A program made the translations under genes and the position numbers. From contig JBLDXI010000013.1 of assembly GCA_047495785.1 (NCBI GenBank), positions 1,240,001 to 1,304,000 of the forward strand: DNA of 64,000 bases, given 5' to 3'. Source of the stretch: Lepidodermella squamata. Lineage: Eukaryota; Animalia; Gastrotricha. The notes below the pieces were generated by a model. That model was not told where the DNA came from, did not search any database, and worked only from the letters and a program-made list of their open reading frames with translations. This document shows positions 32,047-39,500 of the stretch, one piece after another; positions within the stretch are counted from its first letter, which is position 1; each line of letters starts with the position of its first letter.

Positions 32047-33852
32047 TTAGGGACGATTTGCGCTTTGTTGCACCAGTGGCATCGACGTCTCATCTTCCAC
32101 ACCTTGCGGCACATCGCCCTTTCGAACATCAGCACCAGCGCCGCTGGATTGATGGGCAGCATCGTGTGATGATTCACCAACTTCCCACAGGTATTCATCT
32201 TCGAATAGCTGATTTTCCTCAACGACATCGAACACTGGCAATCGAAGAATGAATCCTGCATTAATTGAGACTCAATTAGAGATCGAAGAAATAATAAGGA
32301 AATAAGCAAACCGGTGATAGCACCTGAGAGCAATGCTACTCCTAACGTTACAATCATGGCTAAGAACTGATAACCAGCTTGAGATGGCGCTGATCGCTCA
32401 TCTCCGAAGCCAAACGATTCCAATTGTGAATCAAGTCTACTCGACGCAGATTTTCCTAGAATCTCAAGTGTTTCATTGTAGTATGACGACCATTTGCTTT
32501 CGGGAAGCCTTGCGGGAAACTTTTCGTACAAAGTCAAGCCATACTGGTCCAATGAAGCGCTGCTCGCCATCATACCACCTGAATTATGAGCATTTAATTG
32601 GCGAGTTTGACCGCAGTTACAGCGAAAAGCAAATACCTATAAAACCAGCTAACAGTCCAGGCATGCCGTGCAAATTCTGCCGCGGTTAGTTGAAAAAAGC
32701 CGATGAGAACTATTAAGGGAATCGCCATTGCAAACTTACATGTACTCCGCAAGTATCATGAATTTTCAGATATTTATTCATTGCAGGAGACAGAAATCTT
32801 ATATTTGCGCAATATATAAACATTTTGCCGCAAATTGATTGAAAATTTTACTTGTAGCCAAGAACTGAAATGATTCCAGAAAGAGCTCCGATGATCATTG
32901 CACCGAAAGGCCTCACTAACAGGTCAGCTGCAGTTCCAATAGCAACCCCGCCAGCTAAAGTTGCGTTTTGAATGTGAACCATATTAAAGCGCCCATCGCA
33001 AAGCCAAGACACGATAAATGTCGTGACGCAGCAAGCTGCTAACGAATAATATGTGTTGATAAATGCTCGGCTTTGTTCTGCTCCAAGAAGAGCGCCTCCG
33101 TTGAAAGAGGGCCAGAACATCCACAAGAAAACGGTACCGATCATTGCAAACATGTCGGAATTGTACGACGCGCCTTCCTTGTCTTTGCATTTCTCCACGT
33201 CCTTACGATGAAGAACAAAAGCTACTGCTAATCCGAAATACGCGCCAAAAGTGTGGACGAAAATCGAAGCCCCAGCATCAGTCACTCTAAATTTGTGAAC
33301 GCCGATGTACTCATTTGCTTGGGCACAAGCGATTTCGATAAGCGCCATAATTCCTAATTGAGTCGGGCTGGCTTTGCCCAAAACTGCGCCCATCGATATC
33401 AATACGGTTGCCGTAGCAAAATCAGCGGTTAGCATGCTGTTCAGATTAATGCTAAATCTCAAGTTCTCATCCAAGGAGAGAAAGCCTCTGACTAGCGTAG
33501 CCCATTGCAGGCAAAACGACGCGAGCATGAAGTTTAAGGCCACCTGAAAAAATATGTTACCGTTTTTACCTATCGAATTTCAGAAAGATATTACGCTTGA
33601 ATAGCTATATCGCTTCAGGAAGGTCATTAGGAATCCGAAACCGACGAACATCATTACGTGAACATCCTGAAACGCGGCGTAAGCGTTCGGATGTTGCACC
33701 GTTTCATCCTCCTTAATCTTCGCAGGTAAGGCTTCACTGTCGTACTGTCCAAATAGCGCAAAGAGGACGATGATGCTTATTTGAAGGCTTCCGATCAGGA
33801 GCGGGAATGTCACCCGCTGGGCACTGTAACCTCGATGCCGTGTAGTGGCCAT
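32047..33852 (-). CDS. Rh-family ammonium/ammonia transporter, paralogue B
   Basis: Exons 33852-33595, 33543-32852, 32797-32740, 32676-32637, 32578-32312 and 32255-32047; the same Rh signature motifs (HTFGAYFGL, WMFWPSFN, HIQNATLAGG, DTCGVHNLHGMPG). Confidence 0.97.
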
Positions 33853-34214
33853 TTTTATCAGCTTCCTCTTCTACGCCCTGTAAAATTACTGCCTCGAATG
33901 TGAAAAATGTGTGGATTACGCCTCTGACCATTTTTTGATGGTCAGTGTTATCCGAGCTGCGGGTGTGTGCTATCTCTTGCGACTACTACGAGATAAGCTT
34001 AGCGCGGCGTTTATTTGACCCACACATTATCTGTTTAATTTAGGTTTAATTGATAACGAAATTTCCATGAATAACACACCGCCTTCGTATTATGAAACTT
34101 CAACAAGGGACGGAGATTGCCATAGATACAAACGCCTTTTACTTCTTTCAAACATGTTACTTTAAGCAGTACTGAGAAAATTGACAGAAAAAACGAAAAT
34201 GATAATAACGAGTC

Positions 34215-35925
34215 TCATTGTAGCATGCAACTTTCACTGCGTCCTGACCCGAAAGTTTGGACGTAGTAAACGCCTCCACCAGACTTCGGTGCTTGACCCG
34301 CTCCCATGTAAGTGTTGTCGCTCATGATGTTAGCGTAGTGGCCGGGTGAGTTCATCCACTGTTGGAAGGCACCAGTCAGCGACCCACTGTTCCACGCAAT
34401 GTTCTCCGCATAGCTGTTCCAGTGAAAACCAACGCGTTCGAAACGCACACCAGGATCGCTGCCATCTGAGCCCGTGTGGCTGAAGAAGTTGTTCGTAGAC
34501 ATGTCATTAGCATGATTTTGAGCGGCTTGATTGAGTTTCCTTCGAAATCAGAGAATCGGGAATCAGAAATGAAAGCAGTTTTATATATCAACTTACGAAT
34601 TCAAGCAGAAGGCAGGCTTTCCATTCTGAGCGCGAGCGTTGTTGACAAGATCCAACAGCTGATTTTGCCATATCTGACCTCGAGTAGTAGTCGACGGTAT
34701 CGTGGCGCGGGTGGTCGTTAGCCGACGAGTTGTTGCTTCAGTTGTCAGTGGTTCAGTTTGTGTTGTCGGTGGTTCGGTTTGTGTTGTCGGCGGGTCGGTT
34801 TGTGTTGTCGGTGTAGTAGTACTTTCCGGCAGTGGCGTGGTTGTTGTAGTCGATGACGTTTCAGAGCTTGTCGTAGTCGCTGGAATCTCTTGCCGTCCCC
34901 GCTGCGATTGTTGGGCAATGAAGTTGTAAAACGAGCAGATTCGATTGAAGACCAGAGTTTGGATCTTTGAAGCCGAACAAAATGCGCCGCCCGAACTGCC
35001 GCCATTTTTACCAAAATCGGTAGCGATACCCATACATTGATTGCCGCAAAACAAGGGCCCGCCCAGGTAAACGACAGATCGGCCACAAAATTGGGACTGG
35101 GACGTAGCGCAAACTTGCTGATCTGCCACCGGCATCGAACCGCCGCATTGCTGTCGCGAAATTGAATTCAAATTCAAACTCACAGGAATCAAGGTCTGGT
35201 CTATAAACAAAAATAATTGTAAAGAAATTTCACTCAAAAGCAGCGGCAAACCGACCTGATTTGTAAACCCAGCCAAGCGCAACAACAGAGCTGCAACCAT
35301 CAAACGTTGTCCCGATTGGGTTTGTGTCAGTGTCGCAAACGCCTGCCGACAACAAAATTGCCGGGTCGACATTGGAAACACTCGGTAGAGCATCAGCAAG
35401 TTCTAAGAAAGTGTAACTCCATTCTGCCGAAGTAGAATTGAAGACGACACTCTTCACAAATCGAACGTACTTCTTGCCACTTGCGCCCCCGGTATTGGTC
35501 AAACCGGCGGATACCCGAATCCTTGAAAAAATTCAATAAAATAAAGATACCAATTTTGAAATAGCTAACGTTTTCGCCAGTTTTTGCGTTTGAAGATCCA
35601 TTACGCATTGAATAGTTGTTAGCACGATTACAGGTGAGATTAAGGTGCCGGCACATTGACGCATTTCGCCGCTTCGAAGCTGCGATTCGATGTAAACAAC
35701 CGATTTGAAAAGGTCACCAGATGCCGTCAGGAGATCATTCGAAGTTCTCACTGCCTCGAAAGCAGTTGAGGGAGGGCTAGCCTCGGCTAAAATGGCATTA
35801 TCGAGCTCGATTTCGAAAAATCGTCGGACGGACGGTGGATCCCCCGGAGGTAAATGCGTTTCTTCGGCATAGGCCGAGGTAACTAGAATCGAACTCAAGC
35901 AAAGAAAAGCTGTGAATACTCTCAT
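34215..35925 (-). CDS. Secreted chimera: inactive trypsin-fold domain + Thr-rich linker + microbial-type CAP/SCP domain
   Basis: Exons 35925-35570, 35521-35256, 35200-34597 and 34539-34215. Signal peptide; CAGTLISPVIVLTTIQCV (His to Gln), LGW and VYLGGPLFC (Ser to Leu); TTQTEPP repeats; LLDLVNNARAQNG..LNSKLNQAAQNHANDM..FFSHTGSDGS..AENIA..WMNSPGHYANIM..YYVQTFG. Confidence 0.88.
34750..34812 (-). repeat. Coding tandem repeat, 21-nt unit x3 (PTTQT[D/E]P)
   Basis: Three copies of gtttgtgttgtcgg with 21-nt periodicity. Confidence 0.8.
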
Positions 35926-35983: not shown

Positions 35984-35991
35984 CTTATATA
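35984..35991 (-). promoter_or_regulatory. TATA box of the trypsin-CAP gene
   Basis: TATATAAG on the minus strand, about 60 nt upstream of the ATG at 35925. Confidence 0.45.
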
Positions 35992-36552: not shown

Positions 36553-39500
36553 CTACGGATAATGACCCCTTTCATCCTGCTGAATCTGCTGCTTGAAGAA
36601 CTGCTTCGCCTGGCGCCGTTCCGTCTCGTAGGCCGGTATCACTTCGTAACAGTCGGTTAGCACCTCGATAACGGTTTCATGCAAGTTTTTGCGCATTGTT
36701 GCCAAGTGTTGGCCTAGAGTGTGGTCCAAATTAGGCAGGGCCTGGAAGTGATACAGCGCATGCTTGTTTCGAAGCTCCTCCGCCAACAACGCCGTATGTT
36801 GGAAATGCACAGTATCTGAAATTTGTGGAAAACATTAAAAATACGGCTCGAAAAAACTTGGGAAATACGAACCATCAGATAAGCCATGGATAACAAAAAG
36901 CTGGTGCAGCTTCAGGTTGCTCAAAATATCCTTGGAATCACCGATTCTGATGGAGGCATCGTAATATGCATCTGTATTTTCGAGCCATAAACCGAGATGT
37001 CGTTCGGTGAAGGTCGAATCTAAAAATTTCAATTAAATCAAGATTTTCGGGTGTTTTTCGACTTACAATGAAGCCGCCATTGAATGATAGGAGCTACAGC
37101 TATGCTACAACGAACTGCGGTTTGCTCCCCCACCGCCAGTTTCGTAGCTAAATAGCCACCGTAGTCGTAACCGAAGACAGCTGTTTTCCGCTTCTCGACG
37201 AAGTTGTACATCTTCTGAAAGTATTCAACAGCCTTCAACTGGTCTTGAAGTTCGTAATGGCCAAGCCGTTTGTACACGGCCTGTTCGTAGACCAGACCCT
37301 GGCCGAAAGTGCCTCGACCGTCGATTTTCACCGAAACAACACCCATCGCAGCTGAGAGGAAGTATTCAAGTGACAGCTTGAATTGCAGGGTGTTTGCAGA
37401 CGACTGCGGCTCATTGTCGACGATTAGCAGCAGCGGGAAAGCGAAGACGTGCTTACGATTTATCTGCGGCGAAAATAGGATCCGGGCCCAGGCTGTTTGT
37501 TGCAGTTGCGGGTTGCTCGAAGTTCGATTCAGTTCGATTTTATGCCACTCAACGATGGGTAATGATCGATTGTTGTAGAGCTCTCGCAACTGCTCATTCC
37601 CCTCTAGAGTATGGACTAGCTCAGGGGTGACAGTCGAGTTGGCGATAACTAGCCGGTAAATTGCGGAAAAAGGCACTCCGATTGGCACCATATGAGGTTG
37701 ATTGTAGTGAGGCGACTCTTTGTCGAGCGGCGCTTCGCAGTGGTAGAGGATGAGTGGCGAAACCCCAGCGTAGACGTTATTCAACGAGAATTCAGCGCGG
37801 CCGTACATGCAGTCAAACTGGCACGAGATGCAAACCAGCGAACTGCAGTCTCGGTAGTCAGGATGGGACGCGTAGACATTGACAGCGTACAAATTCCTCA
37901 TACGCGTGTCGCTCATCGAGTCATTATCAGCAGCCGCCATGAAGTACAGCAAGTTGTTGACGGCGTCGAAATGCACGATTTCTTGCACGTCGAACTGGCC
38001 ACAGGCCTGCAAAACCGGCGCCATGTCGCCGCCGCCGATTGAAAAGGCCGTTCTCAACGCCTTCGGCAGCAAGTAGATCTGCCGAAATGCTTGAATGCTG
38101 GTCATCGACGGCCAAATCATGAATGTTGCCTCGCCAAAGTTGAGGAAACTCAACCTCGGCAGCCAGGAACCGCCAGCCGGAGCACGCTGGGCGAGCGGGA
38201 ACGGCATTTCACCCCCTCGCCAAGAATTCGGGTGGGCGAATTGATAACGAAAAACGGTGCTTTGATTCTGGAAACGGTTTTGACACGTCATCAGAACTGA
38301 GGATGAGTTGATCCACGTGACTGACGTCAAATAGGCGCAGGGTGACCCGGGCGCCCCGCCCAACGGAGCACCCGGCGATGGGAAGATCCTTTCCAGCTTT
38401 TTCGGGTCATTCTGCTCGCGATTTGTGTCGACTATCATAACTTCAAAGGTCGGTATGTGCTTTATCGACTCCTTGTGCCCTGCTTTCGGATAGTGAACCT
38501 GGCGCTGGCATGAGAATATGTCCTCTGGGTAGTAGAATGGCACGGAGAAAGACGGCACCTCCGTGTCGTTGAATACTGCAAATACCAAGAATCGAGAATC
38601 TGGCGACCACCAGATGGCGTTGTCAGTCTTTAGCAAATCCTCTTCGTAGAGCCAATCCGGGATCCCAGCGTAGACAACATCGCGTTGCCCACGGAAAACT
38701 TCGACAGGAACCGTAGTAAACGGAGCTTCGACAAAGTACAAAATGTCATCGGCATGGAAGGCGATTTTCGATTCGCTAGGTGACCAAACGGCGAATCGAA
38801 GCTGAGATCGATCGTTGAAAAATTTCGCCAGGTCTTGCGGGACATTCGGCGCGGTTGGCGGTGTTCCAGTTGGGAAAGCACTGTAAAAAAAATCGGTAAA
38901 TTTGCACGTGGAAGTTTACGATGATGAAAACAGTCTATAGAAGTGTTAAATTCAGGGCAAGCGAAATCGATAAAAACAGGGCATGACAAAATGATGTGAA
39001 AAAGCAGAATCAAGTGAAGGAAAGCAAGCCTCCAAATATTTCTCTTCAAATTCTACTATTAGCACTCGAATAAAAAATTTCAAAATTCAAGCTTTAAAAT
39101 CACTCGTTTATATATATTGTGATGTGAAAAGCGAATAACGCAGGTAAAAAAAATTACTAGTGTTCTACATGTGAATTCGAGAAAAAGTGATAAATAAAAC
39201 GCTTGTTACTTGTTATCATCATCTTCTTCAACCGGTGCTTTATTTCTAAAAATTTAGGAAAAATTGCATGAAACACAGCATGAAAGTCCTTTTGTTAGTC
39301 TTATGATTATTCCTATATATTGGAGATTTCTAAGCAAAGTTGTTAATATTAACTCCGTTATAGCAATCATAATTTTTAGTTAAGCGCCAATTAACACAGT
39401 AGTAGTATGTTATGTCAAATTTTGGAAAGTCTGCGCCAAGTCGAACTCACACGAAACTACATGAACTTACGCTTCCATAGGCTTTCCATAAGCCGGAATT

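What the first reader, a model, noticed from the sequence alone, without database searches (positions are those of the whole stretch)
34215..35925. Chimeric secreted protein: dead trypsin domain fused to a microbial-type CAP domain
Seen: signal peptide, a trypsin fold lacking the catalytic His (TTIQCV) and Ser (VYLGGP), a mucin-like Thr stalk, and a CAP domain interrupted by a normal 57-nt intron. Known: HxxDM..FFSHTGSDGS..R..G..AENIA..WMNSPGH.ANI is the bacterial (YkwD-like) CAP subtype. It differs from animal CRISP/GLIPR CAPs (GHYTQxVW). The CLN.KL start and FGSG..ESC end recall oomycete SCP proteins (from memory). Inference: a horizontally acquired CAP domain was domesticated, gained an intron and fused to a host pseudo-protease, possibly for secretion, adhesion or defence.
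Basis: partly seen in the sequence, partly recalled or inferred. Interest (0 to 1): 0.75.

Follow-up and report, generated by a model that had tools for sequence, protein, structure and literature searches.

The report
Dead protease fused to microbial-type CAP domain
A small freshwater animal carries an intact gene for a secreted protein that joins a burnt-out trypsin-like domain, a sugar-coated stalk and a CAP domain of the kind found in bacteria, diatoms and water moulds rather than in animals. The CAP part was probably taken from a microbe, but nothing yet shows what the protein does.

Summary
On the minus strand, 34215-35925 is a four-exon gene with introns of 48, 55 and 57 nt. It encodes a signal peptide, a very diverged chymotrypsin-fold domain (His57 replaced by Gln, Ser195 by Leu), a 70-residue stalk (46% Thr) and a C-terminal CAP domain (Pfam E 3.7e-15).

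One exon holds the end of the protease domain, the stalk and the first CAP helix in one open frame, so the fusion does not depend on splicing. DNA reads show two haplotypes at host depth. Coding differences are 7 synonymous to 2 non-synonymous.

The CAP domain is of the YkwD/DalA type. The only solved relatives by sequence are bacterial, and no animal relative turned up. However, it shares a cysteine pair with diatom and oomycete secreted proteins, and none of the 80 nearest bacterial genes has that pair. Trees place it among those eukaryotic sequences, but its exact sister is unstable.

A microbial origin is therefore supported, a directly bacterial one is not, and the donor is unresolved. 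None of 81 long CAP relatives carries a trypsin domain. No RNA data exist, so expression and function are inferred.

This finding was not seen before in this scan.

The parts
35570..35925 (-). Exon 1. It holds the ATG (35925), the signal peptide (35866-35925), a roughly 50-residue pro-like region and the start of the trypsin-like domain with Cys42...Cys58. His57 is replaced by Gln (TTIQC).
   Evidence: ORF and sequence. Pfam Trypsin E 0.013 for residues 71-118. All 5 PDB hits are chymotrypsin-family chains.
35522..35569 (-). Intron 1, 48 nt, GTTAGC...AG, 21% GC. It is the only in-frame way from exon 1 into exon 2. This is the least certain splice site.
   Evidence: Frame analysis; composition. 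No RNA was available to confirm it.
35256..35521 (-). Exon 2, the middle of the trypsin-like domain. It includes the region where Asp102 would lie (no Asp at the expected place, judged by eye) and a G-C-x-x-V-x-x-G-W motif like the Cys136/GWG region.
   Evidence: Its length fits the gap between Pfam profile positions 54 and 135 left by exons 1 and 3. No family hit of its own.
35201..35255 (-). Intron 2, 55 nt, GT...AG, 33% GC.
34597..35200 (-). Exon 3, a single open frame. It contains the C-terminal half of the trypsin-like domain (to about 34911), the Thr/Pro stalk (34680-34889) and the first helix of the CAP domain (34597-34676).
   Evidence: Translation. Pfam Trypsin E 0.12. Kallikrein-6 alignments with Leu at Ser195. 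Atlas: 29 of 30 nearest clusters are Trypsin. The tail aligns to P0103 residues 75-95. Six of the seven single-base differences in this exon are synonymous.
34741..34813 (-). 21-nt tandem repeat, 3.5 copies, encoding the P-T-T-Q-T-E-P units of the stalk.
34540..34596 (-). Intron 3, 57 nt, GTAAGT...AG, phase 2, inside the CAP domain between 'CLN' and 'KL'.
   Evidence: Collinearity with P0103 across the junction.
34215..34539 (-). Exon 4: the rest of the CAP domain (107 residues) and the stop codon TGA (34215-34217). All columns that are invariant in the alignment of relatives are kept.
   Evidence: Pfam CAP E 3.7e-15. NCBIfam YkwD 6.6e-16 and DalA 3.8e-13. Alignment A1.
35985..35991 (-). TATA-like motif (TATATAA) about 60 nt upstream of the ATG.
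   Evidence: Read by eye; not tested.
34010..34015 (-). AATAAA about 200 nt downstream of the stop codon; a candidate polyadenylation signal.
   Evidence: Read by eye; not tested.

Best explanation
This is a real, intact host gene of a small-intron animal.

The gene encodes one secreted protein with four parts: a signal peptide; a catalytically dead chymotrypsin-fold (S1A-like) domain that keeps the usual disulfide cysteines; a Thr/Pro-rich, presumably O-glycosylated stalk; and a C-terminal CAP domain of the microbial YkwD/DalA type.

The CAP module is foreign to animals and was most likely acquired by horizontal transfer. Its cysteine pair and tree position point to the secreted SCP proteins of microbial eukaryotes (diatoms, oomycetes, other algae) as the nearest kin, rather than to bacteria directly. 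It now has host-like base composition and a host-sized intron, and it lies in the same exon frame as the pseudo-protease.

Inferred mechanism: the protein has no enzymatic activity and works as an extracellular binding protein held out on a mucin stalk. The CAP domain would bind a microbial envelope component or a small hydrophobic ligand; the YkwD-type lipoprotein DalA binds peptidoglycan. The dead protease domain would offer a second binding surface, as serine-protease homologues do. A role in handling bacteria, in food capture, gut mucus or defence, is the best guess.

Shown here: the gene structure, the domains, the dead catalytic sites, the microbial CAP type, integration in the host genome, and sequence constraint. 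Inferred: the direction and donor of the transfer, secretion, glycosylation, the ligand and the role.
For: - Gene model and domains.
- Dead sites: His57 to Gln and Ser195 to Leu in tool alignments.
- Trypsin family: two independent exons hit the same Pfam family in order, at E 0.013 and 0.12. For one pre-named model out of 24,736, the second hit has a chance of about 5e-6. The scores sum to 28.3 bits against a cut-off of 20.6. The Atlas gives 29 of 30 Trypsin clusters.
- CAP family: Pfam 57 bits. Best NCBIfam models are YkwD and DalA. PDB gives only bacterial 4ifa (1e-7) and BB0689, with no animal CAP structure at E<=1.
- CAP relatives: 23,751 at E<=1e-3, none above 57% identity.
- Named relatives: Phytophthora, Pythium, Globisporangium, the diatom Coscinodiscus, Caulerpa and many bacteria, but no animal.
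- Cys pair: shared with 45 sequences, whose named members are all stramenopiles, and present in 0 of the 80 nearest bacterial loci.
- Trees: the careful tree gives a clade of the window with the diatom protein and three unnamed sequences, at 96/89 support. Holding the window with all Cys-pair rows as one clade gives a likelihood 24.9 units higher than the free quick search, p-AU 0.75.
- Nearest relative: P0103 lies beside a ClpP gene whose best PDB match is 7eko. From memory, 7eko is a Chlamydomonas chloroplast ClpP, so P0103 is probably algal.
- Host integration: flanked by an Rh/Amt gene and a DPP-IV gene. DNA contigs of a public run cover the gene and its flanks at about 100x, with two haplotypes at about 50x each. 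GC3 resembles that of the neighbouring genes.
- Constraint: 7 synonymous and 2 non-synonymous differences plus an in-frame 3-nt indel.
- Architecture: none of 81 long CAP relatives has a Trypsin domain, and none resembles exons 1-3.
- Function lead: DalA binds peptidoglycan (PMC10470522).
Against: - No RNA evidence, so expression, the exon 1-2 splice and the single transcript are all unverified.
- Each trypsin hit is below threshold on its own. Exon 2 has no hit. The single-exon fold was useless, with pLDDT 39.
- The tree rests on about 107 columns. With denser sampling the window's sister changed to P0093, then to a bacterial locus and P0089. P0089, the most identical relative at 57%, lies on a contig with overlapping genes and is probably bacterial.
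- Raw similarity to actinobacteria (about 93 bits) equals that to the protist proteins.
- Most close relatives are unnamed and some could be animals. One Atlas cluster lists Rotifera.
- Function rests on analogy alone.
Confidence: 0.55

Rival explanations
1. Direct bacterium-to-animal transfer. The CAP domain came straight from a bacterium, and the cysteine pair arose later or by convergence.
For: - The best family models are bacterial (YkwD, DalA) and the only PDB matches are bacterial.
- Bacterial relatives from many phyla reach 42-57% identity, as high as the protist ones.
- The most identical hit, P0089, looks prokaryotic.
- In the third tree a bacterial locus lies close to the window.
Against: - None of the 80 nearest bacterial loci has the cysteine pair that the window shares with stramenopile proteins.
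- The careful tree groups the window with a diatom protein at 96/89 support.
- Monophyly of the window with the Cys-pair sequences is favoured, not rejected.
Confidence: 0.2
2. Ancient vertical inheritance. A YkwD-like CAP gene was present in early eukaryotes and was kept in stramenopiles, some green algae and a few small invertebrates, but lost in most animals. No transfer into the animal took place.
For: - The subtype occurs in several eukaryotic groups: oomycetes, a diatom and Caulerpa.
- An Atlas cluster lists Rotifera.
- The window has no close donor; all relatives are at most 57-58% identical.
- Composition and introns are fully host-like.
Against: - No named animal appears among the best hits of three large searches.
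- This scenario needs very many independent losses.
- The window does not branch outside the protist sequences as an animal lineage would. It falls among them.
Confidence: 0.15
3. Gene-model artefact or a silent relic. The four exons are not one expressed gene: they are two genes, a pseudogene or a mis-joined model.
For: - No RNA run exists for this stretch.
- The intron 1 donor, GTTAGC, is unusual.
- Exon 2 has no family hit.
- The protease half has no relatives anywhere.
Against: - Exon 3 alone links protease, stalk and CAP in one open frame.
- All frames are open from the ATG to the stop codon.
- The differences are 7 synonymous to 2 non-synonymous, and the indel is in frame.
- Exon lengths fit the trypsin profile.
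- The CAP alignment is seamless across intron 3.
- The introns are AT-rich and the exons are not.
Confidence: 0.08

Closest known systems
Bacterial YkwD/DalA-type CAP (SCP) domain proteins, for example B. anthracis 4IFA, Borrelia BB0689 and Rhodobacter DalA
   Same: Same CAP subtype and signature motifs (H..DM, FSHTGSDGS, ENIA, WMNSPGH..NI). These are the best NCBIfam models and the only PDB sequence matches.
   Different: The window's domain has an extra cysteine pair that the nearest bacterial genes lack. It is interrupted by a spliceosomal intron. It sits in an animal gene behind a pseudo-protease and a mucin stalk. It scores far below NCBIfam's own cut-offs (58 against 171 bits, on a partial domain).
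Secreted SCP-like extracellular proteins of oomycetes and diatoms (Phytophthora palmivora POM61103.1, Pythium insidiosum KAJ0392851.1, a Coscinodiscus wailesii MMETSP protein)
   Same: Signal peptide, YkwD-like CAP domain, the same cysteine pair ('LCxNxKL' ... 'SESC'), and Thr/Ser-rich linkers in some members. The window groups with them in trees.
   Different: Only 43-50% identical. They are CAP-only, CAP repeats, or CAP plus lectin or Cys-rich tails. None has a trypsin-like domain.
Serine-protease homologues (non-catalytic S1A domains), such as arthropod clip-domain SPHs and masquerade, and vertebrate azurocidin and haptoglobin (from general knowledge)
   Same: Chymotrypsin-fold domain with catalytic residues replaced and disulfide cysteines kept; secreted; presumed to act by binding.
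   Different: Far more diverged: no detectable relative. No clip, CUB or Sushi partner domain. No IVGG-type activation site seen by eye. The fusion partner is a microbial-type CAP domain.
Animal CAP proteins (CRISP, GLIPR, antigen 5, VAL)
   Same: Same superfamily (PF00188); secreted; often combined with a second module.
   Different: Different subtype. No animal CAP structure matches by sequence at E<=1, while a bacterial one matches at 1e-7. The animal signature motifs are absent.

Membership tests
CAP/SCP superfamily (Pfam PF00188) | Profile score above Pfam's gathering threshold | tested here: met
   Exon 4 alone scores 57.2 bits against a cut-off of 21.1, E 3.7e-15, profile 22-117 of 117. 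The first helix lies in exon 3.
CAP/SCP superfamily (Pfam PF00188) | Conserved core residues (His/Glu/Asp cluster) retained | tested here: met
   All 11 columns that are invariant in alignment A1 (D12, H21, R32, E45, N46, W61, S64, G66, H67, N70, I71) are present in the window.
YkwD family (NCBIfam TIGR02909) and DalA (NF052539) | Score above NCBIfam's curated cut-off | tested here: not met
   58.4 bits against 171 for YkwD, and 49.6 against 200 for DalA. They are the best models, so the subtype fits but equivalog membership does not. Only exon 4 was scored.
Eukaryotic (stramenopile-type) Cys-pair SCP clade; a working group defined here, not a curated family | Cys in 'LCxNxKL' plus Cys just after the last strand ('SESC') | tested here: met
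   The window has 'FCLNSKL' and 'SESC'. The pair is shared with 45 sequences including Phytophthora, Pythium, Globisporangium and Coscinodiscus, and is present in 0 of 80 bacterial loci.
Eukaryotic (stramenopile-type) Cys-pair SCP clade | Phylogenetic placement inside the group | tested here: inconclusive
   96/89 support with a diatom protein in one tree; a different sister in another; the constraint test favours one clade but cannot prove it.
Peptidase S1 / chymotrypsin fold (Pfam PF00089) | Profile score above the gathering threshold | tested here: inconclusive
Per exon: 15.7 and 12.6 bits against a cut-off of 20.6. They are collinear and sum to 28.3 bits.
Peptidase S1 / chymotrypsin fold (Pfam PF00089) | Catalytic triad His57-Asp102-Ser195 | tested here: not met
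   Gln at His57 and Leu at Ser195. Asp102 could not be aligned (exon 2 has no hit). It therefore has the fold of the family but is not an active peptidase.
Peptidase S1 / chymotrypsin fold (Pfam PF00089) | Two-barrel fold shown by structure | tested here: inconclusive
   The single-exon AlphaFold model had pLDDT 38.8 and is unusable. Atlas sequence features give 29 of 30 Trypsin clusters.
Mucin-like O-glycosylated linker | Thr/Ser/Pro-rich repetitive stretch | tested here: met
   70 residues, 46% Thr, 14% Pro, 9% Ser; 21-nt repeat of 3.5 copies. Pfam Mucin is a weak hit at E 2e-4, below its cut-off. Glycosylation itself cannot be tested here.

The most novel reading that the evidence does not exclude
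An animal took a secreted CAP domain from a microbial eukaryote it lives with or eats (a diatom-like alga or an oomycete). It welded the domain, through a mucin stalk, onto a decayed protease scaffold of its own. The result is a domain combination seen in no other sequence examined, and it works as a stalked receptor for bacterial cell wall or microbial lipids in feeding or defence.
Probability: 0.2. Interest if true: 0.6.

Novelty: new variant of a known kind. Interest (0 to 1): 0.45.

Why it matters
- It adds a well-anchored candidate for gene transfer into gastrotrichs. My one search on gastrotrichs and horizontal gene transfer listed no paper with both terms in its title, and I opened none of them.
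- The gene has introns, host neighbours, two haplotypes and signs of constraint.
- It shows that a 'bacterial-type' domain in an animal need not come from bacteria. The cysteine pair points to protist secreted proteins. This is a caution for alien-index screens that score only bacteria against animals.
- The trypsin-like plus YkwD-type CAP architecture was absent from all relatives examined, so it may be a fresh example of domain capture making a new extracellular protein.
- YkwD-type CAP domains have almost no known biochemistry beyond DalA's binding of peptidoglycan, so an animal that keeps one under constraint offers a second setting in which to test the ligand.
- It remains a single lineage-specific gene without expression data, made of two very common domains, so its importance is moderate.

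Tried and rejected
- RNA evidence: the only run that holds the stretch is DNA, kept as contigs, so no joints and no transcript could be seen.
- Relatives of the protease half: the word search of exon 3 residues 1-100 found nothing. A metagenome scan found 599 pattern matches but no true relative. A local phmmer of exons 1-3 against all CAP relatives found nothing beyond low-complexity matches and the CAP helix.
- Fold of exon 3 residues 1-100 alone: pLDDT 38.8, unusable, so no fold search was run.
- Exon 2: no Pfam, NCBIfam or meaningful PDB hit.
It was rerun with the single protein.
- AU test on the 92-row careful tree: it did not finish in two tries. It was done instead on the 100-row quick tree.
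- Organisms of the unnamed closest relatives: the look-ups give only run accessions. Only indirect clues were obtained: a ClpP neighbour whose best PDB match is 7eko and overlapping genes next to P0089.
- Literature searches for YkwD-type CAPs in eukaryotes and for gastrotrich gene transfer gave nothing specific.
- Earlier findings of this scan, searched by words and by sequence: nothing on this gene.
- Rejected: contamination or a chimeric assembly, given the host flanks, uniform depth and two haplotypes; a pseudogene, given the open frames and synonymous bias; and the alternative intron 1 donor at 35550, which is out of frame and would leave only 29 nt.
- Slip: I pasted the exon 3 translation (the output) into a script instead of reading it by reference.

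Full report
**Anatomy.** Reading the minus strand gives one gene from the ATG at 35925 to the TGA at 34217-34215.
- Exon 1 is 35925-35570, exon 2 is 35521-35256, exon 3 is 35200-34597 and exon 4 is 34539-34215.
- The introns are 48, 55 and 57 nt long, start with GT and end with AG, and have 21-33% GC against 48-52% in the exons.
- Introns 2 and 3 are unambiguous.
- Intron 1 uses a GTTAGC donor. It is the only in-frame route, because the nearer GTATCT donor is out of frame and would leave only 29 nt. It is therefore the weakest point of the model.
- A TATA-like motif lies about 60 nt upstream of the ATG, and an AATAAA lies about 200 nt downstream of the stop codon (both by eye).

**N-terminal half.**
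- The product starts with a typical signal peptide: a hydrophobic core, then A-Y-A before E-E.
- Pfam finds Trypsin (PF00089) in the tail of exon 1 (E 0.013, profile 19-46) and in the head of exon 3 (E 0.12, profile 142-203). Both hits are below the 20.6-bit cut-off. They are to the same family and in the right order, and the 88 residues of exon 2 fit the gap between them.
- For a model named in advance, an E-value of 0.12 over 24,736 models corresponds to a chance of about 5e-6.
- PDB sequence searches agree. All five hits of exon 1 are chymotrypsin-family proteases aligned at the His57 motif. Seven of the eight hits of exon 3 are kallikrein-6 aligned from the Cys168 region to the C-terminal helix.
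- The Atlas feature search of exon 3 residues 1-100 returns Trypsin for 29 of 30 clusters.
- In these alignments His57 is Gln (TTIQC) and Ser195 is Leu (VYLGGP).
- By eye, the cysteines of the 42-58, 136-201, 168-182 and 191-220 disulfides are in place. There is no Asp at the expected Asp102 position and no IVGG-type activation site.
- The domain is extremely diverged. No relative was found by word search or in metagenome contigs. A single-exon fold was useless, with pLDDT 39.

**Stalk and CAP domain.**
- Exon 3 continues, in the same open frame, into a 70-residue stretch with 46% Thr and 14% Pro. It is built partly from a 21-nt repeat.
- The frame then runs on into the first helix of the CAP domain.
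- Exon 4 is a clear CAP domain: Pfam 57 bits, E 3.7e-15.
- The tail of exon 3 aligns to relative P0103 up to residue 95. Exon 4 aligns from residue 97. The 57-nt intron is therefore placed exactly, and removing it restores an uninterrupted domain.
- One exon contains parts of both domains, so the chimera does not depend on any splice.

**Is it a host gene under constraint?**
- The neighbours are an Rh/Amt transporter gene and a DPP-IV family gene, both on the same strand and typical of animals.
- The one public run that holds the stretch is DNA. Its contigs cover the gene and its flanks at about 100x and split into two haplotype paths of about 50x at variable spots. That excludes a contaminant.
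- GC3 of the CAP exon (0.57) lies between that of the two neighbouring genes.
- Of nine single-base differences in the coding sequence, seven are synonymous. The only indel is an in-frame 3-nt insertion. By my own binomial estimate the chance of this is about 0.003-0.01.
- The 3' UTR carries 11 differences and two indels in about 125 nt.
- Expression itself could not be tested.

**What kind of CAP domain?**
- The best NCBIfam models are YkwD and DalA.
- The only PDB matches by sequence are two bacterial proteins, and no animal CAP structure matches at E<=1.
- The exhaustive search found 23,751 relatives, none above 57% identity.
- The named relatives are bacteria from many phyla, oomycetes (Phytophthora, Pythium, Globisporangium), the diatom Coscinodiscus and the green alga Caulerpa, but no animal. 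One Atlas cluster mentions Rotifera.

**Where did it come from?**
- The window has a Cys in 'LCxNxKL' and a Cys in a 'SESC' tail. The diatom and oomycete proteins and a set of unnamed sequences with signal peptides have the same two.
- None of the 80 nearest bacterial genome loci has the pair.
- A careful ML tree (92 rows) puts the window in a clade with the diatom protein and three unnamed proteins, at 96/89 support. The 249-row quick tree gives the same clade at SH-aLRT 92.
- With more Cys-pair sequences added, the immediate sister changed.
- Even so, the tree with the window and all 45 Cys-pair rows held together had a higher likelihood than the free search and was not rejected, p-AU 0.75.
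- The contig of P0103, the nearest row in the 249-row tree, carries a ClpP gene whose best PDB match is 7eko. From memory, 7eko is a chloroplast ClpP, so that contig is probably algal.
- Against this, the most identical relative (P0089, 57%) sits on a contig with overlapping genes and is probably bacterial. Raw scores to actinobacteria equal those to the protist proteins.
- Conclusion: microbial origin is likely, kinship with eukaryotic microbes is favoured, and the donor is unresolved with about 107 columns.

**Architecture and function.**
- None of the 81 long CAP relatives has a Trypsin domain. Their partners are cell-wall and surface modules such as Cu_amine_oxidN1, SLH, Peptidase_M23, Big_2, RTX repeats and ricin-type lectins. 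None resembles exons 1-3.
- The YkwD-type lipoprotein DalA binds peptidoglycan non-covalently (PMC10470522). CAP-domain proteins are enriched in the secretomes of 33 of 37 oomycete species (PMC5700374).
- From this I infer a non-enzymatic, secreted, stalked binding protein that probably deals with microbes. This is analogy, not evidence.

**Verdict.**
'Bacterial donor' should be replaced by 'microbial, probably protist-type, donor unresolved'.
- This is a new variant of known kinds and of moderate interest.

Noticed in passing
window 32848-33852 (-): Rh/Amt ammonium transporter gene immediately downstream, split by a very short intron (Pfam Ammonium_transp E 8e-53 and 2e-5 for two adjacent ORFs).
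   Followed up: partly
window 37038-38741 (-): Large exon of a DPP-IV family gene (DPPIV_N E 2e-35, Peptidase_S9 E 2e-18) upstream of the finding. This fits the earlier notes on a DPP6/10-like gene with alternative first exons at 40-55 kb.
   Followed up: partly
window 35097: All reads of the public DNA run carry an extra in-frame TGA on the plus strand (one extra His in the pseudo-protease domain), plus two synonymous changes, relative to the window. The run is therefore not the same individual or strain as the assembly.
   Followed up: partly
L001 149-1057 and L083 25-1038 (proteins P0103, P0102): Two close CAP relatives of the window (P0103 is the nearest row in the 249-row tree) carry one or two C-terminal six-cysteine modules after the YkwD-like CAP domain. 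Pfam does not recognise these modules at E<=0.001. The layout recalls animal CRISPs (CAP plus a small Cys-rich domain), but on the microbial CAP subtype.
   Followed up: no
L001 1537-1854 (-): A ClpP gene about 480 nt from the P0103 CAP gene on an AT-rich, intron-poor contig. Its best PDB match is 7eko, which from memory is a chloroplast ClpP, so the contig is probably from an alga.
   Followed up: partly
Atlas search of window 34218-34538 (-), row 3: A 50-member CAP cluster among the nearest neighbours lists Rotifera as its commonest phylum. Another group of small invertebrates may therefore also carry YkwD-like CAP genes.
   Followed up: no
Alignment A2 (81 long CAP relatives): YkwD-like CAP domains are repeatedly combined with cell-wall or surface modules (Cu_amine_oxidN1, SLH, Peptidase_M23, Big_2, RTX repeats). 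This fits a cell-envelope ligand for this CAP subtype.
   Followed up: no
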